Positions 1,435 through 64,000 of a DNA stretch of 64,000 nt are shown here, in pieces. The notes under the pieces were generated by a model. The model had not been told where the DNA came from and made no database searches. It saw only the letters and a program-made list of their open reading frames with translations. The first letter of the stretch is position 1; every line of letters begins with the position of its first letter. This stretch comes from Laetmonice hystrix (lineage: Eukaryota), in contig OZ249449.1 in assembly GCA_965235115.1 (NCBI GenBank), positions 9,300,001 through 9,364,000 of the forward strand, in the 5' to 3' direction. A program made the translations under genes and the position numbers.

Positions 1435-4400
1435 CTGTAACATACAAAATTCAAATTTACAATTATTGCTAATAAATACAAAGCTCAACCAGTCTTCTGC
1501 AATCTTCAAACACCGTTCCTTACTGAAAGAGAATTGCAGGATTACATCTATGTTTCCTATGTTGTTAGCAAATATTTCTCAAGTAAATCACAAAAAGAGC
1601 CCTGGGCTACTGGTCCTTAGATGTAACGTATTTGGTTTTCCACTCTATTCTTGCACTCTTCCCTCCCCCCCCCCCCTGGTGTGAAGCAGCTGAAACTACC
1701 ACTGATGTCTGTATTCCTCACAAGAGGGCGCCACGGGTGCCACGACCGGCTCAGTTTCTGTCGGGCACGGATTAATGGACCATTCTTACATTTTGCTTTC
1801 CTGAACGGAAAAACGTAGTATTTCTGGCAGTTTCCTTTGAAATCTCCCTTAAAATAGAAGCCAACACATTTTTGGTTTTCTGGAACACCTATTGGGGCCT
1901 TCTGGAAACTTTGGGGTAAGGCCACCCAATTCTCTTTTCCATTCTTTTTTCGTTTGCTTATTTTATTTGGCAAAGACATCGTAATCCCTAGATCACACAA
2001 CTTTCCAAACCTTTTATTTTCATGAGTACAGATCTTTGAACAACCCCGGTTGACACCTTTATCTCACCATGGAATTTCCGTCCGTCTTTGCATCTGATAA
2101 CAGAAACAGATACGCCAATGCAGACTAGTCCCTGAACCGCCACTTTGTCCAGTATAGTTTCGAGCACTAGTACCCGGTTCAAGTCAAAAAGGTGCCCAAA
2201 CTGGGAGGCCAGTAATTTAAAACTCCCTACTTTTTTTTTCTTATGGGTAGAGACCGAAGTTGCACCTGGTTGGGTCAGCTTCACGCTTGATGAGCATCAA
2301 TAAGAGTTTTCCTCTTTGTCTTTATATTTCTGAGGTGAACCGAAGTTTTTCATGAATGTCACACCTGCGTCCATCTAGCTAGGCCTACTCTAAGAAAGTG
2401 TATATTACCTTTGAAAGGCCCTATGCAGTAGGCATACATTTGGTCAGCCATCTAGTCCTGCACAGACACCCTCCACACACACGACATACTGGCCTTCACG
2501 GGCATGTGTGGGTGATGCTGAATGTGTTTAGGCCAAAACAAATTTTTGTTTCTTCTCCCCACACGCGTCACCTGAAATCCTCTTCGTTAAGATTAAAAAA
2601 AAATCATTTCTGGTTTATTTTAGGTATAAAAGCTTAAAATGACAAAAAAAGCTACGGTTTCTCACTTCCGCATTCATTTTCGACTTTTTTTTCAGAAAAT
2701 GAAGTTATGGGGGGAAGCCCCCCCCCAGCCCCTCCCCCTGCTCCGCTGTACCTGGTTTTCATATTCTTTAATAAAAACATTGAATATCATTGTATTTGCT
2801 TTGTTTTCTTGATGATTTCTTCATATACCCAACAGAAATCAGTCATTATCTGGTTACAGGAAGAAAAGAAAAAGAAAATAGCACGGCTTCACCACAGCAA
2901 CATTGGTTTATATAAAAGGATGAGAAACTAAATTTCTTTTCGGCCTAAGGGGCACGTCGCACCAATAATTTTATAAAAAGTAAAAGAAACATAACTAAAC
3001 CTTTAGATAGCTACCTTACCGGATAGGCCTGCCATGTCACACTTTTTGTCGCACCTCATTTATTATATATACCTGCCTGGTGTAACCGGTCTGCTCACGG
3101 TAATGTGAACCTCAACGAGTACCTTATTTAAACATGTGCATCTTCAGAGGTTTCTACTCGATAAAACAAGTCAAACAGAGGGCAGGGGGTTTAAGTTGAG
3201 GGTCGGGTACCGTCACTGCAACTGGTTGGAAAAAAAATCTCGCTTAACCACTGGTTCTAGTTTATGAATTTATGAGCTTTGCTAACTGAATCTTGCTAGA
3301 GCACCTCCTGCTACTGAAGTCCTGAGAACAGAGCAATGTATGATGGCCACTGTGGACAGCCATAAAACAAAGTACTCCAGTTTTTAAAATAGGTGCTTGC
3401 CTTACATCGACTTGAACTCTTCGGTACTAAAAACTTGAGCAACCCCCTAGCCCCACACCCGGTATGCCAAACACATCCAAGGACCTGAGTGATTAAAAAC
3501 TTGGAGCAATCCCCTAGCCCCACACCCGGTATGCCAAACACATCCAGGGACCTGAGTGATTAAAAACTTGGAGCAATCCCCTAGCCCCACACCCGGTATG
3601 CAAAACACATCCAAGGACCTGAGTGATTAAAAACTTGGAGCAATCCCCTAGCCCCACACCCGGTATGCCAAACACATCCAGGGACCTGAGTGATTAAAAA
3701 CTTGGAGCAACCCCCTAGCCCTACACCCGGTATGCCAAACACATCCAAGGACCTGAGTGATTAAAAACTTGGAGCAATCCCCTAGCCCCACACCCGGTAT
3801 GCAAAACACAGCCAAGGACCTGAGTGATTTAAAACTTGGAGCAATCCCCTAGCCCCACACCCGGTATGCAAAACACATCCAAGGACCTGAGCGATATAAA
3901 ACTTGGAGCAACCCCCTAGCCCCACACCCGGTATGCAAAACACATCCAGGGACCTGAGTGATTAAAAACTTGGAGCAACCCCCTAGCCCCACACCCGGTA
4001 TGCAAAACACATCCAAGGACCTGGGTGATTTAAAACTTGGAGCAACCCCCTAGCCCCACACCCGGTATGCAAAACACAGCCAAGGACCTGAGTGATTTAA
4101 AACTTGAAGCAACCCCCTAGCCCCACACCCGGTATGCAAAACACATCCAAGGACCTGAGCGATATAAAACTTGGAGCAACCCCCTAGCCCCACACCCGGT
4201 ATGCCAAACACATCCAAGGACCTGAGCGATTTAAAACTTAGAGCAATCCCCTAGCCCCACACCCGGTATGCCAAACACATCCAAGGACCTGAGCGATTTA
4301 AAACTTGGAGCAACCCCCTAGCCCCACACCCGGTATGCCAAACACATCCAAGGACCTGAGTGATTTAAAACTTGGAGCAACCCCCTAGCCCCACACCCGG

Positions 4401-10400: not shown

Positions 10401-13086
10401 TATGGGTTGACTAGTCTAACAAGGTGGCATGGTGAAACCAGTTGGTAAGACAAACGCTATTCTCTCTTAAACTAACAACAGTGCCCCTTTCAACACAACT
10501 CTGTGGCCGCCAGACCAACCCTTACGTCCAGGGGTGGGTAAAATTCAAACATGAAAATACAGAGTGAACGAACAAAAAGCTGTCAGTGTGAAAACAGTCA
10601 TTTCATAACTCAAAACATTCAATGGCAGACCCTGTGGCGATATATAAAAAAGGTAATTTTTTTTTTTTTCAAATTATTTTCAAAGAACTCTATGTACGTG
10701 TATGTACTAAGTTCTAATTACCTTCATCAATCAAGACTTTTCCAAATTGATGCCAGATTCACTATTCAGCCAAAGACCCTATTGAATAAATTTAAAGAAA
10801 GAAATTCTACGTGGGCACCCATGTGTTGTGAGGTAAACGTTTGTGAGGTATATTCAGGTATTTCTGTTGTCCTTGTAATACTAGATTATTCAAACAGGCA
10901 ACGACAAGTTTATTGTCAAGGCAACAGCAATCATAATAGTTCAAAATATTAAAGTACACACAAAAAAATAACTTACTGATGAAGTGATGCTGGAATTGAA
11001 TTTTAATAAATGATACTCTTTTCAACTTACAGTACGGTAATACCAGTAAGTACTGCCTTTTATTCCTACAAATTATCGATATTCTTCCCTTGAAAAAGAC
11101 TGGTAAAAGTCTGTATACTTATCCCGTTTCCTCGATTAAAATTAAATCGAGGACAATTACTTATCCCGTTATCTGTGACAGTCTGACCATCCGATTGGAC
11201 ATTTGTTGTCATGATCATCACCAAAAAAAACAGGTAGATTGCTCTAGGCCTTGGTGTTAGATGTAAACTGATTGAAGTTTCATCTTCATAGGCAATTGAT
11301 GAACCATATAGGCCTACTTCGGCATTTAATCTTGCTCAACTCAAGTCAAAGTAGCTGTGACTGACGTGCTGCTAATCCTTCTGACTCTCGTGGACGATTC
11401 CGTAGAACTGTCATGGTTTTATCTTGTATTCTGTGACTTAGACAATTCATGAATACATGTATCCCTGAACCGATCCTTCTCAATCAACCCTTTCCCTTGC
11501 CGTCAAATTCATCGTCGCTAGACATTTTCTTTGACTAGCCCTACGCAACATGCCTGCTGGAACAACTCTGTTTCGGCAAAGATGACATCACTGACGCCAC
11601 CCAGTGGCAGGGATGCAAAAATCAGATGCGATGAAGACTCCATCGGAAAAAGTCATATTTTTAACGATTACATAAAATCTAATTTTTCTCTGTGTCTTTT
11701 GGCAGAACTGTTCATAAACATGTTGTATATCGGAGTTAAATGTCAGCAGGTAGAAAAAAAACACATATAATGAGAAAAGCATAAAAAATGTTTGGGATAA
11801 ACACATTTTAACTGAATTGACTGCATGGGTGTTACAATGTAAAAACAGACAACAATAATACATCCCAGTCTGTTGGGATTCTACAATCCAGATAAGATTC
11901 TAAGAATCAGAGAAGAGTGAAAAAAAACCCTCTCTGAAACTGATGTAGGAAGATGGACGTACACAGGAAACCAAGCTTTCAGAAAAAAACTGGGTCCCTT
12001 TAAAATTAAATCGAGGACAACAACTCTCTATGAGATCACCACTTACCACTCCATTTGATTCACCTTGATCCTCCGAAGTCGTTTCCAAGTCAGAACTTGC
12101 CGTTGACGAGAATGACTCCGATAGATTGACCCGCTGCCCATTCATTACACCCTGCCCATTTCCATGGCAATTTTCTGTGGCTTCAGAGTTGTTTTTTTGC
12201 CCATTGCTATTGTTATTGTTGCTGTCTCCGCTTGCATAGAGCGCTTTGGTTTGGTGGAATGTTGAGGCAAATTCATTTACAATTGTTCGGTCCGAGTCAA
12301 TTTTAGCAAGGTTGTTTTCACATGCCATACAGAGCAATGGGGAGCGACATGTCGCTGGATCAAGTACCAAGAGCAAGACTGTCTCAAGACGGTCTTTGAG
12401 ACCCGGTTCCAACAAGTTGTCCTTAGCAAAGATATTTTTTGACTTGTTATCTTTACTGCTTTGGTGGCAGACCAAACACACTGTGGTATTTGGGACTGAC
12501 TGAGCTTGAGATTCACAATATTCTAAAGTTTGTTGGAAAGATTCACGGAATGCATCAACACTGCACTGGTAGTCATCTATGTCTTCCATTTTTTCTTCAC
12601 AGCATCTGCACAGGAGGCCGCTGTGACAAGTTGCCTCCTCCAACTCCACCTAAAAATAAAATTAAAACTCATTATAATACAACCTGCAAAAATTATCAAC
12701 CGTGGATCCCTAAGTAGCAGGTCCATCTTGAAAATGACGATTTTGAACAAAATCAACATTACATCTGATGTGATGGCAAAGGTGTGGCAATTTCTAAAAA
12801 AAACAGGGAAGGAATTTTTATACAACATCAACAATGAGAAGCTCTCGGATGACCCACAGAACTAATCTGAGGAAAATAGGTATGATAATCATTGATAGGA
12901 GAGGAGCATGCTTCCTATATCTAATATACTATATGTGGGCAGATAGATCACTCAGCTTACCTGTAGCACCACCTGGAGCCTCTCTTTAAGCGGCTGCAAT
13001 CCCAGCATGCCTTTTTCGAACACATTGCTGGCCGTAGCCCCCAGGGGGCCATTACAAACAAGGCACAGGTCTGCTGCCGGCGCCAT
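1..13086 (-). CDS. Gene B: tandem ZAD-ZAD plus C2H2 zinc-finger protein (coding exons 13086-12961, 12649-12047, probably 1434-<1)
   Basis: ATG at 13086, GT-AG junctions, phase 0/0/0. The join from 12047 to 1434 is phase-compatible but inferred; extra exons or a separate gene cannot be excluded. Confidence 0.6.
3428..4610. repeat. 67-bp minisatellite, about 17.5 copies
   Basis: Unit cccctagccccacacccggtatgccaaacacatccaaggacctgagtgattaaaaacttggagcaat, period 67 (3444 to 3511). Confidence 0.97.
5430..5769. mobile_element. 340-bp Kolobok/T2-like MITE
   Basis: TTAA at 5426-5429 and 5770-5773; perfect 13-bp TIR AGGTGCTATTCGT / ACGAATAGCACCT. TTAA TSD with AGG termini is the Kolobok/T2 signature. 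Confidence 0.85.
9241..10323. repeat. 22-bp minisatellite (about 49 units) with interspersed 18/24-bp variant units
   Basis: Unit tccagatggcaagtatgaacca; variants tccagatggcaagtacaa and tccacacgaggcaagtatgaacaa. Confidence 0.97.
12047..12649 (-). CDS. Gene B exon: second half of ZAD1 plus complete ZAD2 and low-complexity linker
   Basis: Acceptor tttttag|GTG at 12649; donor GTG|gtaagt at 12047; 201 codons; ..LLCRCC..(end of ZAD1)..CLVC..RLETVL..LLCMAC.. Confidence 0.88.
12961..13086 (-). CDS. Gene B first coding exon (MAPAADLCLVCNGPLGATASNVFEKGMLGLQPLKERLQVVLQ), first half of ZAD1
   Basis: Acceptor tattacag| at 13106, in-frame TGA just upstream of ATG 13086, donor CAG|gtaagc at 12961 (phase 0). 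Confidence 0.88.
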
Positions 13087-24377: not shown

Positions 24378-46407
<22,030 letters not shown>

Positions 46408-54852: not shown

Positions 54853-55820
54853 GTGAGTATGGGATTCGTCTTGTTGGACCCCGCAGCCGCCAGGCGGCGC
54901 CACTATTATAGTCTCCACTGCGGGATTCCTCTTCTCTTTTTGACCCCCGCAGGCGATAGATTACAACAAATCGCCTATCACTATCAGCGCCTTCCCTGTG
55001 TCTGTGACTGGGCCGATATTTCCGGTGAGAACAATAGCATAGGTAGCATGTTAACAATAACATATTAGGCGTAAAACAGGTTACTTTGCCTTTGGTAACG
55101 TTAGCTGAAAATACAACATTTCGGATGTAGGGGTCGATTGAGAGGGTAGTGTTTGGCCAAAGTCGGCCTAGACCGGGAATGGGTGGCACTTTTCACCGAG
55201 AACGACCGAGGACTACCGCGGACTAGTCAAGACCGGGGTCCTAAGCTAACTAACCCGAGCAGGTGAAGACAAAAGATTGGCAACTCCCATCTGCCTAGAT
55301 AATCTGCTCTCCACTAGAGCATGTCATGGCGAACGCCGCCCAACCTATTTTTTAACTATCACTAGAGTCACTCCTCTAATAACAGTATCCCTAACGAAGC
55401 CAAGGCCTGGCCTAACTAACCCAAAAATTTGGCAAAATCCCTCAAAGAGTTTTGTAATACCCCATCCCTAAGACTTAGTCCTAAGGACAGTGTTCTGCAG
55501 TCGTTCGAGGCAGACCATTTGATGTGTGTGTGTGTGTGGGGGGGGGGCTATGGCTATGGTTTTTCTTTATTAGCAATTACTAAATTAGCAACCTTCTTTT
55601 ATTTTTGCCGCCCATGCCAAAGCTATCTTTTTTTCGCTATAGATGACCATTTCTCAAACTATTTTTTCCCATTTAGACTAGACCTCTATAATATATATTT
55701 GTTTACATAGGGAACAAACTATTTTTTAATGTAGTTTGATGAACAAACTATGTTTTTTCACGTATTTGGGAACAGATTATTTTTTTATCGCCCATTTTTT
55801 CAGATCTGATAAGGTGTGAC

Positions 55821-58800
55821 ATGGATACCTCAGGGCGGACGTCAACTGATTGCTATGGCAACTGTTTGGTGTGTGGTCAAACACTCGACAACCAGTCTTC
55901 CTTCATCAATGTGTTTGAGAATAATCTGGGCACAGAGTCGACTGTTCAACAGGTAAGGATCGTAGGGAGAAAGAATAATCTGGGCACAGAGTCGACTGTT
56001 CAACAGGTAAGGATCGTAGGGAGAAAGAATAATCTGGGCACAGAGTGGACTGTTCAACAGGTAAGGATCGTAGGGAGAAAGAATAATCTGGGTACCGAGT
56101 CGACTGTTCAACAGGTAAGGATCGTAGGGAGAAAGAATAATCTGGGTACAGAGTCGACTGTTCAACAGGTAAGGATCGTAGGGAGAAAGAATAATCTGGG
56201 CACAGAGTCGACTGTTCAACAGGTAAGGATCGTAGGGAGAAAGAATAATCTGGGTACAGAGTCGACTGTTCAACAGGTAAGGATCGTAGGGAGAAAGAAT
56301 AATCTGGGCACAGAGTGGACTGTTCAACAGGTAAGGATCGTAGGGAGAAAGAATAATCTGGGCACAGAGTGGACTGTTCAACAGGTAAGGATCGTAGGGA
56401 GAAAGAATAATCTGGGTACAGAGTCGACTGTTCAACAGGTAAGGATCGTAGGGAGAAAGAATAATCTGGGTACAGAGTCGACTGTTCAACAGGTAAGGAT
56501 CGTAGGGAGAAAGAATAATCTGGGTACAGAGTCGACTGTTCAACAGGTAAGGATCGTAGGGAGAAAGAATAATCTGGGCACAGAGTCGACTGTTCAACAG
56601 GTAAGGATCGTAGGCAGAAAGAATAATCTGGGTACCGAGTCGACTGTTCAACAGGTAAGGATCGTAGGGAGAAAGAATAATCTGGGCACAGAGTCGACTG
56701 TTCAACAGGTAAGGATCGTAGGGAGAAAGAATAATCTGGGTACCGAGTCGACTGTTCAACAGGTAAGGATCGTAGGGAGAAAGAATAATCTGGGTACAGA
56801 GTCGACTGTTCAACAGGTAAGGATCGTAGGGAGAAAGAATAATCTGGGTACCGAGTCGACTGTTCAACAGGTAAGGATCGTAGGGAGAAAGAATAATCTG
56901 GGCACAGAGTCGACTGTTCAACAGGTAAGGATCGTAGGGAGAAAGAATAATCTGGGCACAGAGTCGACTGTTCAACAGGTAAGGATCGTAGGGAGAAAGA
57001 ATAATCTGGGCACAGAGTCGACTGTTCAACAGGTAAGGATCGTAGGGAGAAAGAATAATCTGGGCACAGAGTCGACTGTTCAACAGGTAAGGATCGTAGG
57101 GAGAAAGAATAATCTGGGCACAGAGTCGACTGTTCAACAGGTAAGGATCGTAGGGAGAAAGAATAATCTGGGCACAGAGTCGACTGTTCAACAGGTAAGG
57201 ATCGTAGGGAGAAAGAATAATCTGGGCACAGAGTCGACTGTTCAACAGGTAAGGATCGTAGGGAGAAAGAATAATCTGGGCACAGAGTCGACTGTTCAAC
57301 AGGTAAGGATCGTAGGGAGAAAGAATAATCTGGGCACAGAGTCGACTGTTCAACAGGTAAAGATCGTAGGGAGAAAGAATAATCTGGGCACAGAGTCGAC
57401 TGTTCAACAGGTAAAGATCGTAGGGAGAAAGAATAATCTGGGTGTGCAGAGTCGACTGTTCAACAGGTAAGGATCGTAGGGAGAAAGAATAATCTGGGCA
57501 CAGAGTCGACTGTTCAACAGGTAAGGATCGTAGGGAGAAAGAATAATCTGGGCACAGAGTCGACTGTTCAACAGGTAAGGATCGTAGGGAGAAAGAATAA
57601 TCTGGGTACCGAGTCGACTGTTCAACAGGTAAGGATCGTAGGGAGAAAGAATAATCTGGGTACAGAGTCGACTGTTCAACAGGTAAGGATCGTAGGGAGA
57701 AAGAATAATCTGGGCACAGAGTGGACTGTTCAACAGGTAAGGATCGTAGGGAGAAAGAATAATCTGGGTACCGAGTCGACTGTTCAACAGGTAAGGATCG
57801 TAGGGAGAAAGAATAATCTGGGTACAGAGTCGACTGTTCAACAGGTAAGGATCGTAGGGAGAAAGAATAATCTGGGCACAGAGTCGACTGTTCAACAGGT
57901 AAGGATCGTAGGGAGAAAGAATAATCTGGGTACAGAGTCGACTGTTCAACAGGTAAGGATCGTAGGGAGAAAGAATAATCTGGGCACAGAGTGGACTGTT
58001 CAACAGGTAAGGATCGTAGGGAGAAAGAATAATCTGGGCACAGAGTGGACTGTTCAACAGGTAAGGATCGTAGGGAGAAAGAATAATCTGGGCACAGAGT
58101 CGACTGTTCAACAGGTAAGGATCGTAGGGAGAAAGAATAATCTGGGTACAGAGTCGACTGTTCAACAGGTAAGGATCGTAGGGAGAAAGAATAATCTGGG
58201 TACAGAGTCGACTGTTCAACAGGTAAGGATCGTAGGGAGAAAGAATAATCTGGGCACAGAGTCGACTGTTCAACAGGTAAGGATCGTAGGCAGAAAGAAT
58301 AATCTGGGTACCGAGTCGACTGTTCAACAGGTAAGGATCGTAGGGAGAAAGAATAATCTGGGCACAGAGTCGACTGTTCAACAGGTAAGGATCGTAGGGA
58401 GAAAGAATAATCTGGGTACCGAGTCGACTGTTCAACAGGTAAGGATCGTAGGGAGAAAGAATAATCTGGGTACAGAGTCGACTGTTCAACAGGTAAGGAT
58501 CGTAGGGAGAAAGAATAATCTGGGTACCGAGTCGACTGTTCAACAGGTAAGGATCGTAGGGAGAAAGAATAATCTGGGCACAGAGTCGACTGTTCAACAG
58601 GTAAGGATCGTAGGGAGAAAGAATAATCTGGGCACAGAGTCGACTGTTCAACAGGTAAGGATCGTAGGGAGAAAGAATAATCTGGGCACAGAGTCGACTG
58701 TTCAACAGGTAAGGATCGTAGGGAGAAAGAATAATCTGGGCACAGAGTCGACTGTTCAACAGGTAAGGATCGTAGGGAGAAAGAATAATCTGGGCACAGA

Positions 58801-61800
58801 GTCGACTGTTCAACAGGTAAGGATCGTAGGGAGAAAGAATAATCTGGGCACAGAGTCGACTGTTCAACAGGTAAGGATCGTAGGGAGAAAGAATAATCTG
58901 GGCACAGAGTCGACTGTTCAACAGGTAAGGATCGTAGGGAGAAAGAATAATCTGGGCACAGAGTCGACTGTTCAACAGGTAAGGATCGTAGGGAGAAAGA
59001 ATAATCTGGGCACAGAGTCGACTGTTCAACAGGTAAAGATCGTAGGGAGAAAGAATAATCTGGGCACAGAGTCGACTGTTCAACAGGTAAAGATCGTAGG
59101 GAGAAAGAATAATCTGGGTGTGCAGAGTCGACTGTTCAACAGGTAAGGATCGTAGGGAGAAAGAATAATCTGGGCACAGAGTCGACTGTTCAACAGGTAA
59201 GGATCGTAGGGAGAAAGAATAATCTGGGCACAGAGTCGACTGTTCAACAGGTAAGGATCGTAGGGAGAAAGAATAATCTGGGCACAGAGTCGACTGTTCA
59301 ACAGGTAAGGATCGTAGGGAGAAAGAATAATCTGGGCACAGAGTCGACTGTTCAACAGGTAAGGATCGTAGGGAGAAAGAATAATCTGGGCACAGAGTCG
59401 ACTGTTCAACAGGTAAGGATCGTAGGGAGAAAGAATAATCTGGGCACAGAGTCGACTGTTCAACAGGTAAGGATCGTAGGGAGAAAGAATAATCTGGGCA
59501 CAGAGTCGACTGTTCAACAGGTAAGGATCGTAGGGAGAAAGAATAATCTGGGCACAGAGTGGACTGTTCAACAGGTAAGGATCGTAGGGAGAAAGAATAA
59601 TCTGGGCACAGAGTCGACTGTTCAACAGGTAAGGATCGTAGGGAGAAAGAATAATCTGGGTACCGAGTCGACTGTTCAACAGGTAAGGATCGTAGGGAGA
59701 AAGAATAATCTGGGCACAGAGTCGACTGTTCAACAGGTAAAGATCGTAGGGAGAAAGAATAATCTGGGCACAGAGTCGACTGTTCAACAGGTAAGGATCG
59801 TAGGGAGAAAGAATAATCTGGGTACAGAGTCGACTGTTCAACAGGTAAGGATCGTAGGGAGAAAGAATAATCTGGGCACAGAGTCGACTGTTCAACAGGT
59901 AAGGATCGTAGGGAGAAAGAATAATCTGGGCACAGAGTGGACTGTTCAACAGGTAAGGATCGTAGGGAGAAAGAATAATCTGGGTACAGAGTGGACTGTT
60001 CAACAGGTAAGGATCGTAGGGAGAAAGAATAATCTGGGCACAGAGTCGACTGTTCAACAGGTAAGGATCGTAGGGAGAAAGAATAATCTGGGCACAGAGT
60101 GGACTGTTCAACAGGTAAGGATCGTAGGGAGAAAGAATAATCTGGGTACAGAGTCGACTGTTCAACAGGTAAGGATCGTAGGGAGAAAGAATAATCTGGG
60201 TACAGAGTCGACTGTTCAACAGGTAAGGATCGTAGGGAGAAAGAATAATCTGGGTACAGAGTCGACTGTTCAACAGGTAAGGATCGTAGGGAGAAAGAAT
60301 AATCTGGGTACCGAGTCGACTGTTCAACAGGTAAGGATCGTAGGGAGAAAGAATAATCTGGGTACAGAGTCGACTGTTCAACAGGTAAGGATTGTAGGGA
60401 GAAAGAATAATCTGGACACAGAGTCGACTGTTCAACAGGTAAGGATCGTAGGCAGAAAGAATAATCTGGGCACAGAGTCGACTGTTCAACAGGTAAGGAT
60501 CGTAGGGAGAAAGAATAATCTGGGCACAGAGTGGACTGTTCAACAGGTAAGGATCGTAGGGAGAAAGAATAATCTGGGTACAGAGTCGACTGTTCAACAG
60601 GTAAGGATCGTAGGGAGAAAGAATAATCTGGGCACAGAGTCGACTGTTCAACAGGTAAGGATCGTAGGGAGAAAGAATAATCTGGGTACAGAGTCGACTG
60701 TTCAACAGGTAAGGATCGTAGGGAGAAAGAATAATCTGGGTACAGAGTCGACTGTTCAACAGGTAAGGATCGTAGGGAGAAAGAATAATCTGGGTACAGA
60801 GTCGACTGTTCAACAGGTAAGGATCGTAGGGAGAAAGAATAATCTGGGCACAGAGTCGACTGTTCAACAGGTAAGGATCGTAGGGAGAAAGAATAATCTG
60901 GGCACAGAGTCGACTGTTCAACAGGTAAGGATCGTAGGGAGAAAGAATAATCTGGGCACAGAGTCGACTGTTCAACAGGTAAGGATCGTAGGGAGAAAGA
61001 ATAATCTGGGCACAGAGTGGACTGTTCAACAGGTAAGGATCGTAGGGAGAAAGAATAATCTGGGTGTGCAGAGTCGACTGTTCAACAGGTAAGGATCGTA
61101 GGGAGAAAGAATAATCTGGGCACAGAGTCGACTGTTCAACAGGTAAGGATCGTAGGGAGAAAGAATAATCTGGGTACAGAGTCGACTGTTCAACAGGTAA
61201 GGATCGTAGGGAGAAAGAATAATCTGGGTACCGAGTCGACTGTTCAACAGGTAAGGATCGTAGGCAGAAAGAATAATCTGGGTGTGCAGAGTCGACTGTT
61301 CAACAGGTAAGGATCGTAGGGAGAAAGAATAATCTGGGCACAGAGTCGACTGTTCAACAGGTAAAGATCGTAGGGAGAAAGAATAATCTGGGCACAGAGT
61401 CGACTGTTCAACAGGTAAGGATCGTAGGGAGAAAGAATAATCTGGGCACAGAGTCGACTGTTCAACAGGTAAGGATCGTAGGGAGAAAGAATAATCTGGG
61501 CACAGAGTCGACTGTTCAACAGGTAAGGATCGTAGGGAGAAAGAATAATCTGGGCACAGAGTCGACTGTTCAACAGGTAAGGATCGTAGGGAGAAAGAAT
61601 AATCTGGGCACAGAGTCGACTGTTCAACAGGTAAGGATCGTAGGGAGAAAGAATAATCTGGGCACAGAGTCGACTGTTCAACAGGTAAGGATCGTAGGGA
61701 GAAAGAATAATCTGGGCACAGAGTGGACTGTTCAACAGGTAAGGATCGTAGGGAGAAAGAATAATCTGGGTACCGAGTCGACTGTTCAACAGGTAAGGAT

Positions 61801-64000
61801 CGTAGGGAGAAAGAATAATCTGGGTACAGAGTCGACTGTTCAACAGGTAAGGATCGTAGGGAGAAAGAATAATCCGGGCACAGAGTCGACTGTTCAACAG
61901 GTAAAGATCGTAGGGAGAAAGAATAATCTGGGTACCGAGTCGACTGTTCAACAGGTAAAGATCGTAGGGAGAAAGAATAATCTGGGTACAGAGTCGACTG
62001 TTCAACAGGTAAGGATCGTAGGGAGAAAGAATAATCTGGGCACAGAGTCGACTGTTCAACAGGTAAGGATCGTAGGGAGAAAGAATAATCTGGGCACAGA
62101 GTCGACTGTTCAACAGGTAAGGATCGTAGGCAGAAAGAATAATCTGGGCACAGAGTCGACTGTTCAACAGGTAAGGATCGTAGGCAGAAAGATAAACCTA
62201 CACCATGATATTTCTGTCAATGTATGGAGATACAGTAACTAAAGGTAGGGAGAATGTCAAAATATACATGAGTCAAAGTCAAGGTTGATTTCAGACATGC
62301 CCGAGAATAGCCATATATTATTCCACTACCACACGTTGTTTGTCAAATATTCCGTCGTCAGCTTCGTGTTGCTCATGCCTTGTAATTGTAGCAAGTCCGC
62401 TGGGGGTGGGTTAAACCCCCTCCAAGCGCCCCCCCCCCCCCCCCACAAAGTGGGTCCACCACTGAGCGCTGACATTTTCAATTTCTACTGATCATTAGCA
62501 ATTCAACACAAGTTTCCGTAAGTAATATGTGCACCATATACAAAAGATACCCTGAGATTGTACTATTATTGTGTTATTTTTTTATCTCAGAGACTGGAGA
62601 ACGTGTTGGGATTTAAACTTGTCATCAAGACCTGCGCCAGCTCGTTCTTCTGTCTGAGTTGTCAGGACAAACTGAGTACAATCGAACGCCTGACTGACGA
62701 CTTTCGCACCACATACATACACACACAGGCCACTCATCTGTAAGTTGGAGCAAGGATTCTTTTTTTATACAATTTTTTCCATCATTAGAATTAAATAAAA
62801 ATTTCAGTAAAAATTGGGATAAAAGAAAGTGGGCTTTAATTTGTTTATTCAGAAGATGATGTTAAATAACTTATTGTTTTCTACTAGAGTCCCGCCAGAA
62901 GACGTCACATGTCAAGGTCACCCAGACCAAGAGGTCAAGGCCACTCTCAAGGTAACTAGATCTTTGATTTGAGGTGCAAGAGCAGATATTTACGCATCCA
63001 CTTAAAATAATGAGGCCAACAAAGCTAACAAATTGTTTCATGGTGAGTAACCTTGATGTAATCTACATTTTATCTTTATCATTTTATGGCAATCCTGTGG
63101 GTACCAGCTAGTCTTAATTTTTTTTTCTTGTTGGCACAACAGGTTTGAAGAAGACTAAATAATTTTGTGTCTTTTTGGCATCATTCAATATTTAGATTAA
63201 GTCTCTCAGTTTCTGAGCCCATGAGCTGAGCAGAGCTTGTAGGGGCTGTTTTTACAATGGTATTTCCTAGATAACCCCAAATTTTGATAAACTGTACATT
63301 TGACTGTACCTTTAAAATATATAAAATCCGAAAATAATTTTATAATAATTGAAATAAACACATGTTGTCTTCAATTCAGGACAACATCATCACACCTGAT
63401 GCAAATGATGGTCACCAGGTGGCAGCAACATCCGAGCAAGCCCAGGAGGAATCGTGTTCAGTGCCCCCTGGTACCGATATGGTGACAACCCCAGTGGAGC
63501 CGAAGCCACCTGCACGGAAAAGAGGCCGACCCAGAAAAGTCAATCCTGCAAACGATGGTCACCAGGTGGCAGCAACATCCGAGCAACCCCAGGAGGAATC
63601 GTGTTCAGTGCTCCCTGGTACCGATATGGTGACAACCCCAGTGGAGCCGAAGCCACCTGCACGGAAAAGAGGCCGACCCAGAAAAGTCAATCCTGGCACG
63701 GCAACGTTGAATCAAACAATCCCTAAGAAACGGTCCTGTATGCAGAAAGAACCAAAGCAAAATGAGTCGGCTGCTGCAAAACCTGAAATCTCTGGTAGTG
63801 AAAATAATTCCGAGAACCTGGCTGATTTAGAGAGCTGTAACCAGGCGCCAGCGTCTGAGAAAAACTCTGGGCAGGCGAAACCTCCGAGGTCTCGAAGGAA
63901 ACAAGCATTGACTCACATTATAAGGAAGCAATCCTTCGAGAGTCGGGAACAAGAAAACGGAAGTCAGATGGGAGGTGTCGTCAAATCATCCGAGTCGGGA
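55821..64000 (+). CDS. Gene C: ZAD-like domain plus 2 AT-hook protein (coding exons 55821-55952, 62591-62739, 62888-62951, 63380->64000)
   Basis: Phases 0, 2, 0 match with GT-AG. The joined sequence CLVC..NVFENNL..QQ|RLENVL..TCASSFFCLSC..DDFRTTY aligns with the gene B ZADs. The last exon is stop-free to the window end with RKRGRPRK twice. Confidence 0.85.
55919..62191 (+). repeat. 54-bp tandem array (116 units) made of gene C exon end plus 5' splice site
   Basis: Unit = GAATAATCTGGGCACAGAGTCGACTGTTCAACAG|gtaaggatcgtagggagaaa. First donor GT at 55953, last at 62171; 6218 = 115x54 + 4x2 (four +2 variant units). Confidence 0.98.
63401..63692 (+). repeat. 147-bp (49-aa) in-exon tandem duplication, each copy carrying an AT-hook
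   Basis: gcaaa(t/c)gatggtcaccagg starts at 63401 and 63548; ANDGHQVAATSEQ.QEESCSV.PGTDMVTTPVEPKPPARKRGRPRKVNP twice. Confidence 0.93.

What the first reader, a model, noticed from the sequence alone, without database searches (positions are those of the whole stretch)
55919..62191. A splice junction amplified 116 times: tandem donor array inside a ZAD domain
Seen: the repeat unit is the last 34 nt of gene C's first coding exon plus the first 20 nt of its intron, so every unit carries CAG|GTAA(G/A)G. The unit is 54 nt and stop-free in the exon frame. Donors 1-28 (55953 to 57411) would each splice in frame to the exon at 62591, adding 0-27 copies of VRIVGRKNNLGTESTVQQ between the two CxxC pairs of the ZAD. 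Later donors lie past a +2 variant and a stop at 57468-57470 (NMD-type products). Each donor is preceded by AG, so the array also resembles a string of recursive-splicing (ratchet) sites and could sequester U1 snRNP. Microhomology (AGAATAA vs AGATAA at the two array ends) suggests how it was seeded. Inference: a VNTR that could tune isoform length or dosage of a dimerising transcription factor. I know of no described case at this scale.
Basis: partly seen in the sequence, partly recalled or inferred. Interest (0 to 1): 0.9.

Follow-up and report, generated by a model that had tools for sequence, protein, structure and literature searches.

The report
Splice donor repeated 116 times, unused
A 54-base minisatellite that began at the end of a zinc-finger gene's first exon has copied that exon's splice donor 116 times into the intron, but the one assembled mRNA joins the first donor to exon 2, so this is a very large example of a known and mostly silent kind of repeat.

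Summary
A 54-nt unit is repeated 116.1 times at 55918-62192, at 97% identity. The unit is the last 34-35 nt of exon 1 plus the first 20 nt of intron 1 of a ZAD-like C2H2 zinc-finger gene. All 116 copies carry CAG|GTAAGG (108) or CAG|GTAAAG (8). Donors 1-28 are in frame. A 56-nt unit follows donor 28, and the frame then stops at 57468-57470.

One public run of the same sample (X4) behaves as RNA. Its 468-nt contig joins unique exon-1 sequence and the 35 shared bases directly to exon 2 at 62591, then to exons 3 and 4. None of its contigs contains the intronic part of a unit. The donor-1 product aligns without a gap to nine paralogous ZAD-like domains.

The kind is already described: minisatellites whose first unit spans an exon-intron boundary. 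Examples are human F7, IFI6/6-16, CBS, LMNB2 and PDGF, and the amphioxus "mirages". In those, the most upstream donor is used, sometimes with the next one or two.

This scan has already noted the same kind of array on other pieces of this genome. What is unusual here is scale: 115 pseudo-donors making up 94% of a 6.6-kb intron. Contigs cannot exclude minor isoforms, allele-specific effects or an inflated copy number.

The parts
55727..55820 (+). Minimum 5' UTR of gene C (inferred)
   Evidence: The RNA contig has 226 nt upstream of the exon 1/2 junction (194 loose + 32 anchored). Only its last 30 loose letters were shown. They map to 55888-55917. The extent further upstream assumes colinearity.
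55821..55952 (+). Exon 1 coding part (44 aa, first CxxC pair of the ZAD-like domain)
   Evidence: ATG-initiated ORF. Pfam zf-AD match on exon 1 + exon 2, E 1.7e-5. The end of the exon is fixed by the RNA contig.
55918..62192 (+). 54-nt x 116.1 tandem array (boundary-spanning minisatellite)
   Evidence: TRF, unit typing, unique to this locus in G000.
55953..55958 (+). Authentic 5' splice site (GTAAGG after CAG), the one seen in RNA
   Evidence: RNA contig: unique exon-1 letters + 35 shared nt, then exon 2.
56007..62176 (+). 115 pseudo-donors identical or nearly identical to the authentic one
   Evidence: positions; 108 GTAAGG, 8 GTAAAG across all 116. No X4 RNA contig covers unit-internal intron sequence.
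57411..57470 (+). First 56-nt unit (frameshift) and the stop at 57468-57470 that closes the exon-1 frame
55953..57467 (+). 1515-nt block of 28 units that recurs at 57629-59143 at 99.87% identity (higher-order duplication inside the array)
62193..62590 (+). Unique remainder of intron 1, with polypyrimidine tract and CAG acceptor
   Evidence: Sequence. 75% pyrimidine before the AG. Joint ends GT..AG.
62591..62739 (+). Exon 2 (second CxxC pair and long helix of the ZAD-like domain)
   Evidence: RNA contig pieces 62588-62739, with the cut +3. Invariant R45 L46 at the exon start in alignment A1.
62888..62951 (+). Exon 3
   Evidence: RNA joints 62739>62888 and 62949(+2)>63378(+2).
63380..64000 (+). 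Start of exon 4. It runs on to L002:2194 and encodes two AT-hook-like KRGRPRK motifs and about 11 C2H2 fingers.
   Evidence: ORF in L002. X4 contigs lie on exon 4.

Best explanation
This is a boundary-spanning intronic minisatellite, a "mirage".

**How it arose (inferred).** A 54-nt segment, made of the last 34-35 nt of exon 1 and the first 20 nt of intron 1, was probably first duplicated by slippage between the short similar motifs at its two ends, AGAATAA and AGATAA. It then grew by unequal exchange to about 116 copies in the assembled haplotype. That growth included a very recent duplication of a block of about 1.5 kb. An intron of about 420 nt became one of 6.6 kb.

**How it is spliced.** Every unit carries a strong donor, but the spliceosome uses the first, cap-proximal one. 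The other 115 are removed with the intron as silent pseudo-sites. This matches the 5'-to-3' preference shown experimentally for the human F7 minisatellite. The protein made is an ordinary ZAD-like C2H2 factor.

**Shown:**
- the anatomy of the array;
- its uniqueness in the genome;
- the exon 1 to exon 2 junction with no extra unit in an assembled RNA contig;
- the absence of unit sequence from the RNA contigs;
- colinearity of the product with paralogues.

**Inferred:** the seeding mechanism, growth by unequal exchange, the reason donor 1 wins, and near-neutrality.
For: **Array anatomy:**. The unit occurs only at this locus in G000.

**RNA.**
- Run X4 covers only exons and shows three GT..AG joints.
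- Its 468-nt contig (depth 60) has 194 loose letters whose last 30 map uniquely to 55888-55917 with one mismatch.
- These are followed by the shared 32-35 nt, then 62591-62739, then exon 3 and the start of exon 4.
- All 7 laid X4 contigs are listed. None covers 61850-62587 apart from that anchor.

**Product length.** Nine paralogous ZAD-like domains match residues about 13-89 of the donor-1 product in single open frames. Alignment A1 has no gap at Q44|R45.

**Genomic background.** The window holds eight further minisatellite arrays, with periods of 22-173 nt and 2-50 copies. Earlier notes of this scan list other donor arrays in the same genome (leads, not evidence).

**Literature.**
- F7, IFI6/6-16, CBS, LMNB2 and PDGF minisatellites reiterate the donor, and the most upstream site is used, alone or with the next one or two (PMC1557585).
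- Amphioxus "mirages" do not disturb splicing (PMC3087553).

**RNA structure.** None distinguishes the donors: z = +0.97 against shuffles.
Against: **The RNA evidence is thin.** It is Logan contigs from one run of one sample. Contigs drop rare variants and give no local depth. Minor isoforms with one or more extra units, and NMD-degraded products of donors 29-116, would be missed.

**The junction contig may come from the other haplotype.**
- It carries non-reference letters at six places (55895, 62654, 62704, 62900, 62903, 62921).
- So as assembled it represents the other haplotype, whose array length is unknown.
- Both alleles do appear in spliced RNA at 63406 (contigs of depth 22.9 and 46.6). 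That site lies in an exonic 147-nt repeat, so the ratio is unreliable.

**The copy number may be wrong.** DNA depth of unit k-mers is 0.43-0.6 of what two haplotypes of the assembled length would give. The other haplotype may be much shorter, or the assembled count may be too high.

**Neutrality is assumed, not tested.**
Confidence: 0.8

Rival explanations
1. This is the reader's model: several donors are used, giving a ladder of in-frame isoforms. These would carry 0-27 extra copies of an 18-aa insert between the two CxxC pairs. Donors 29-116 would give NMD targets. Copy number would thus tune protein length or dosage.
For: All donors are equally strong and donors 1-28 are in frame. In IFI6/6-16 and CBS, the two pseudo-sites next to the authentic one are used constitutively (PMC1557585). 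Contigs cannot exclude minor forms.
Against: No X4 RNA contig holds unit-internal sequence, and the junction contig has zero extra units. Its mean depth (60) is like that of the exon-4 contigs (46-94), so most steady-state mRNA should carry this junction. That is a weak inference from contig means. Paralogous domains have the length of the donor-1 product. In the described cases, sites beyond the third are never used.
Confidence: 0.1
2. The array works at the RNA level. It could be a string of recursive (ratchet) splice sites that removes the long intron stepwise. It could instead be a U1 snRNP-binding platform that slows, protects or retains the pre-mRNA.
For: Every unit has AG|GTAAGG, and there are 116 potential U1 sites in 6.3 kb. 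Recursive splicing would leave the same mRNA as seen, so that result does not exclude it.
Against: The 20 nt upstream of each internal AG are 45% pyrimidine, against 75% at the real acceptor. I saw no branch-point-like motif in the unit by eye. The 54-nt spacing is near the lower limit for an intron (my own knowledge). Nothing suggests selection: the unit is unique to the locus, 97% homogeneous, and carries a 99.87% identical internal block, which points to recent turnover. The same genome makes many minisatellites.
Confidence: 0.05
3. The array is real, but its length in the assembly is wrong. It could be collapsed or, more likely, over-extended, for example by a false duplication of the 1.5-kb block. 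It could also be strongly heterozygous.
For: Block 55953-57467 recurs at 57629-59143 at 99.87% identity. Unit k-mer depth relative to flanks is 32-45 in X1 and X2, against a mean multiplicity of 74.9 in the assembly.
Against: The same depth figures show that dozens of copies per haplotype exist in independent reads. Near-identical higher-order blocks are normal for arrays that grow by unequal exchange. A chromosome-scale assembly in 35 contigs suggests long accurate reads, which is my inference.
Confidence: 0.25

Closest known systems
Human F7 intron 7 minisatellite (37 bp, 5-9 copies; Borensztajn et al. 2006, PMC1557585)
   Same: The first unit spans the exon-intron boundary, so the authentic donor is followed by identical pseudo-donors. 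Only the most upstream one is used. The array is polymorphic in F7.
   Different: - Here there are 116 copies of 54 nt against 5-9 of 37 bp.
- The exon share of the unit is 34-35 nt against 4 bp.
- The donor is much stronger (CAG|GTAAGG against TGG|GTGGGT).
- The exon is a first exon.
- No mutational test has been done here.
Human IFI6 (6-16) intron 2 minisatellite, and the CBS intron 13, LMNB2 and PDGF arrays (as reviewed in PMC1557585)
   Same: These are boundary-spanning minisatellites with 10-26 reiterated donors. Either only the authentic site is used (LMNB2, PDGF), or it is used with the next two (6-16, CBS).
   Different: The largest listed has 25 pseudo-sites, and this one has 115. Use of sites 2 and 3 is documented for 6-16 and CBS. 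Here it is untested at low level and absent at contig level.
Amphioxus "mirages" (Adh3 and globin genes; PMC3087553)
   Same: [quoted passage not shown] Regular splicing is not disturbed, haplotypes differ in copy number, and units evolve in concert.
   Different: The globin mirages have 3-6 copies of 150-160 bp and can involve acceptor boundaries. This array is a donor-side array of far higher copy number.
Recursive splicing ratchet sites (Drosophila Ubx type)
   Same: An AG is juxtaposed with GTAAG, which regenerates a 5' splice site.
   Different: Ratchet sites need a strong polypyrimidine tract and a branch point before the AG. The unit lacks both by my reading (45% pyrimidine). No nascent-RNA evidence is available.

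Membership tests
Boundary-spanning minisatellite ("mirage") | Head-to-tail tandem array of minisatellite-size units | tested here: met
   54 nt x 116.1 copies, 97% matches.
Boundary-spanning minisatellite ("mirage") | The first unit contains a real exon-intron boundary, so the splice site is reiterated in the intron | tested here: met
   116 CAG|GTAA sites. The boundary at 55952/55953 is validated by a spliced RNA contig.
Boundary-spanning minisatellite ("mirage") | Regular splicing persists: the authentic, most upstream site is used and the later copies are silent or nearly so | tested here: met
   An X4 contig joins exon 1 to exon 2 with no extra unit, and no RNA contig carries unit-internal sequence. 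This holds at contig level only. Minor use is not excluded.
Boundary-spanning minisatellite ("mirage") | Copy-number polymorphism between alleles or individuals | tested here: inconclusive
   The depth ratio of 32-45 against an assembled multiplicity of 74.9 hints at unequal haplotypes. No spanning reads were available.
ZAD (Pfam zf-AD, PF07776) | Match to the family profile above the curated cut-off | tested here: not met
   Gene C scores 25.4 bits, E 1.7e-5, against a cut-off of 28. One paralogue scores 31.9 bits and three score below the cut-off.
ZAD (Pfam zf-AD, PF07776) | Two CxxC pairs spaced about 45-50 residues apart | tested here: met
   C15, C18, C65 and C68 are invariant in alignment A1.
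ZAD (Pfam zf-AD, PF07776) | ZAD fold: a zinc-bound N-terminal part and a long C-terminal helix | tested here: inconclusive
   The AF2 model has pLDDT 68. The five best PDB matches are all ZAD crystal structures (M1BP, Pita, Grauzone), with TM 0.47-0.61 but E 0.9-7.
ZAD (Pfam zf-AD, PF07776) | N-terminal position in a protein with a C-terminal C2H2 array | tested here: met
   Exon 4 encodes about 11 C2H2 fingers. The exon order is confirmed by RNA joints.
ZAD (Pfam zf-AD, PF07776) | Homodimerisation | not tested
   No complex prediction was run. It does not bear on the verdict.
Recursive splice (ratchet) site | AG immediately followed by a consensus 5' splice site | tested here: met
   CAG|GTAAGG or CAG|GTAAAG in all units.
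Recursive splice (ratchet) site | Functional 3' splice signals (polypyrimidine tract, branch point) upstream of that AG | tested here: not met
   45% pyrimidine in the 20 nt before the AG, against 75% at the real acceptor. I saw no branch-like motif on reading the unit.
Recursive splice (ratchet) site | Saw-tooth nascent-RNA profile, or lariat or intermediate junction reads | not testable with these tools
   Only contigs of one RNA run were available, and the single read-laying run was used.

The most novel reading that the evidence does not exclude
The array is not silent. On the 116-unit allele, an appreciable share of transcripts would commit to downstream donors, giving in-frame +18-aa steps or NMD substrates. 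Alternatively, 116 U1 sites would slow or retain the pre-mRNA. Either way, array length would set the dosage of this transcription factor allele by allele. If so, this genome's many donor arrays would be a general, fast-mutating source of expression variation.
Probability: 0.08. Interest if true: 0.65.

Novelty: new member of a known kind. Interest (0 to 1): 0.3.

Why it matters
As read here, the array is an extreme example of a known curiosity and does not change what the gene makes.

Its value is as a natural stress test of 5' splice-site choice. There are 116 equally strong donors in a row, 28 of them in frame, and the assembled mRNA still uses the first. That extends the "most upstream site wins" rule in three ways:
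- from 5-26 copies in human genes to more than a hundred;
- to an invertebrate;
- to a first exon.

There is also a practical point for annotators. The array gives a false 549-aa repeat ORF and 115 plausible but apparently unused donors. Gene predictors can mis-model that.

If array length did affect expression, the locus would be a convenient allelic series.

Tried and rejected
- **RNA runs.** Two searches found only four runs of one sample. None is labelled RNA. X4 was recognised as RNA from its behaviour.
- **Coverage of the locus.** The single read-laying run could not cover both exon 1 and exon 2, because the locus exceeds 6000 letters. I laid 61850-63700 and identified exon 1 from the loose letters.
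- **X1 loose end at 61891.** It looked like an insertion in the other haplotype. It is a chance 19-nt resemblance on contig C21 and was dismissed.
- **Orthologues.** A search with the non-finger part of exon 4 gave none at E <= 0.001. The age of the array and of the intron could therefore not be dated.
- **Solved structures.** A sequence search gave nothing.
- **RNA structure.** Masking of internal donors was rejected: z = +0.97.
- **Origin of the intron.** A mobile-element origin for the unique part of the intron has no support. 62200-64000 matched only itself in G000.
- **Allelic expression ratio at 63406.** It was abandoned because the site lies in a 147-nt exonic repeat, where contigs pile up.
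- **Organism.** I did not try to name it. Earlier notes call the genome mollusc-like, which I did not verify.
Full report
**1. What is in the sequence**

Tandem Repeats Finder reports one array at 55918-62192: period 54, 116.1 copies, 97% matches, no indels. A direct count gives 116 occurrences of CAACAG|GTAA. They are spaced 54 nt apart, except for four 56-nt units after donors 28, 59, 95 and 99.

The nine-base donor is CAGGTAAGG in 108 copies and CAGGTAAAG in 8. The array starts 35 nt before the end of an ATG-initiated coding exon (55821-55952). It ends 398 nt before a strong acceptor at 62590/62591.

In the exon frame each unit reads VRIVGRKNNLGTESTVQQ. That frame stays open for 549 codons, until the first 56-nt unit brings a stop at 57468-57470.

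**2. The array is local, young and internally structured**

- Four units used as a query match only this locus in the 627-Mb assembly. The window is G000:C19:9300001-9364000.
- Fifteen unit types occur, and their order shows a higher-order pattern.
- The 1515-nt block 55953-57467 recurs at 57629-59143 at 99.87% identity. This fits growth by unequal exchange. It is also the sort of feature an assembler could produce.
- The window holds eight further minisatellite arrays with periods of 22-173 nt, so this genome makes minisatellites freely.

**3. The gene**

Exon 1 plus exon 2 match Pfam zf-AD at E 1.7e-5 and 25.4 bits, just under the 28-bit cut-off. Further support for a ZAD-like domain:

- Nine paralogous domains exist in the genome.
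- One paralogue passes the Pfam cut-off at 31.9 bits.
- The four cysteines are invariant in alignment A1.
- A moderate-confidence model (pLDDT 68) has ZAD crystal structures (M1BP, Pita, Grauzone) as its five best PDB matches. The TM-scores are 0.47-0.61 and the E-values are weak.

The last exon, read from L002, encodes two AT-hook-like motifs and about 11 C2H2 fingers. "ZAD-like C2H2 factor" is a fair name. Strict Pfam membership is not met for this copy.

**4. RNA evidence**

Only four public runs hold this DNA, all from one sample. Laid on 61850-63700, X1-X3 cover introns and exons alike, so they are DNA. X4 covers only exons and shows three GT..AG joints, so it behaves as RNA.

Its 468-nt contig (mean depth 60) consists of:

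1. 194 letters that lie on nothing in the laid stretch;
2. a 32-nt anchor on the shared exon part of a unit;
3. exon 2 from 62591 (the joint is given as 62588, cut +3);
4. exon 3 (62888-62951) and the start of exon 4 (63380).

The last 30 loose letters map uniquely to 55888-55917, directly abutting the array start, with one mismatch. This mRNA therefore runs from unique exon 1 through the shared 35 nt straight into exon 2, which is the donor-1 junction with no extra unit.

All seven X4 contigs that were laid are listed. None touches 61850-62587 except that anchor, although any unit-containing RNA contig would fit there.

**5. Independent support from protein length**

All nine paralogous domains are encoded without interruption across the point where gene C has intron 1. 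In alignment A1 the donor-1 product is colinear with them, with no gap at Q44|R45. Exon 2 opens on the invariant R-L. An insert of 18 aa or more would be foreign to the family.

**6. Limits**

- Logan contigs drop rare variants and carry one mean depth each. Minor isoforms, and products of donors 29-116 degraded by NMD, would be missed.
- The junction contig carries non-reference letters at six sites. As assembled, it stands for the other haplotype, whose array length I could not determine.
- Spliced contigs with both letters at 63406 suggest that both alleles are expressed. That site lies in an exonic 147-nt repeat, so I draw no ratio from it.
- Unit k-mers have a mean multiplicity of 74.9 in the assembled array. 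Their depth in X1 and X2 is only 32-45 times the flanking depth. The array is real and large, but the two haplotypes may differ greatly, or the assembled count may be too high.

**7. Mechanism**

The most economical reading is a boundary-spanning minisatellite. The 54-nt segment is flanked on its right by AGATAA, which resembles its own start AGAATAA. That suits a first duplication by slippage, followed by unequal exchange. This step is inference.

Use of the first donor matches the experimentally supported 5'-to-3' preference in the F7 minisatellite. [quoted passage not shown] A first exon may add cap-proximal U1 recruitment, which is my own knowledge and was not tested here.

RNA folding does not set donor 1 apart (z = +0.97). 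The units lack a polypyrimidine tract before their AG: 45% pyrimidine against 75% at the true acceptor. This argues against recursive splicing but does not exclude it, since recursive splicing would yield the same mRNA.

**8. Comparison with what is known**

PMC1557585 lists minisatellites whose first unit spans an exon-intron boundary:

| Gene | Array | Donor use |
|---|---|---|
| IFI6/6-16 | 25 pseudo-sites | authentic site plus the first two pseudo-sites |
| CBS | 15-20 repeats | authentic site plus two pseudo-sites |
| LMNB2 | 10-15 x 100 bp | authentic site only |
| PDGF | 16-18 x 81 bp | authentic site only |
| F7 | 5-9 x 37 bp | most upstream site only |

PMC3087553 describes the same arrangement in amphioxus under the name "mirage", with normal splicing and haplotype differences.

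Earlier notes of this scan record several such donor arrays on other pieces of this same genome. One follow-up reached the same verdict. I treat these as leads. They gave me the term "mirage", which I then checked in the paper.

The present array meets the defining features I could test. It differs mainly in scale: 115 pseudo-donors making up 94% of a 6638-nt intron.

**9. Verdict**

The functional inference is not supported by the only RNA evidence available. This is a new and unusually large member of a known kind. Interest is modest. It rests on the locus as a natural 116-site test of donor choice, and as a trap for gene prediction.

Noticed in passing
G000 paralogues (L016-L019; window 12239-12481, minus strand) compared with window 55952/62591: All nine detectable paralogous ZAD-like domains are encoded in one open frame. 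Only gene C has an intron between the two CxxC pairs. This could be an intron gained in gene C or lost in the others. No orthologues were available to decide.
   Followed up: partly
window 63400-63695: An in-frame 147-nt x 2 tandem duplication (97% identical) in exon 4 doubles a 49-aa segment that contains a KRGRPRK AT-hook-like motif. The RNA contigs of X4 cover it.
   Followed up: partly
window 45070-45372: A 46-nt x 6.6 minisatellite whose unit reads AAG|GTAAGG on the minus strand. It may be another reiterated donor. I did not establish whether an exon abuts it.
   Followed up: no
window 55710-55787: A 29-nt x 2.7 repeat (GGGAACAAACTATTTTTT...) lies just where the RNA contig should begin, at about 55727. 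This is the promoter or 5' UTR region of gene C.
   Followed up: no
window 1-55000: Minisatellite density is high: eight arrays with periods of 22-173 nt and 2-50 copies, at 3430, 9239, 29067, 35298, 36031, 40632, 40849 and 45070.
   Followed up: no
window 62353-63268: Heterozygosity is dense in the sample's DNA contigs: about 35 substitutions and several indels in about 900 nt of introns. Six of the differences are also in the RNA contig, including Q25H at 55895.
   Followed up: partly
L002:5700-8300 (minus strand), beyond the window end: Exons of a Na,K-ATPase alpha-subunit-like gene lie on the minus strand downstream of gene C. Earlier notes of the scan concern that gene.
   Followed up: no
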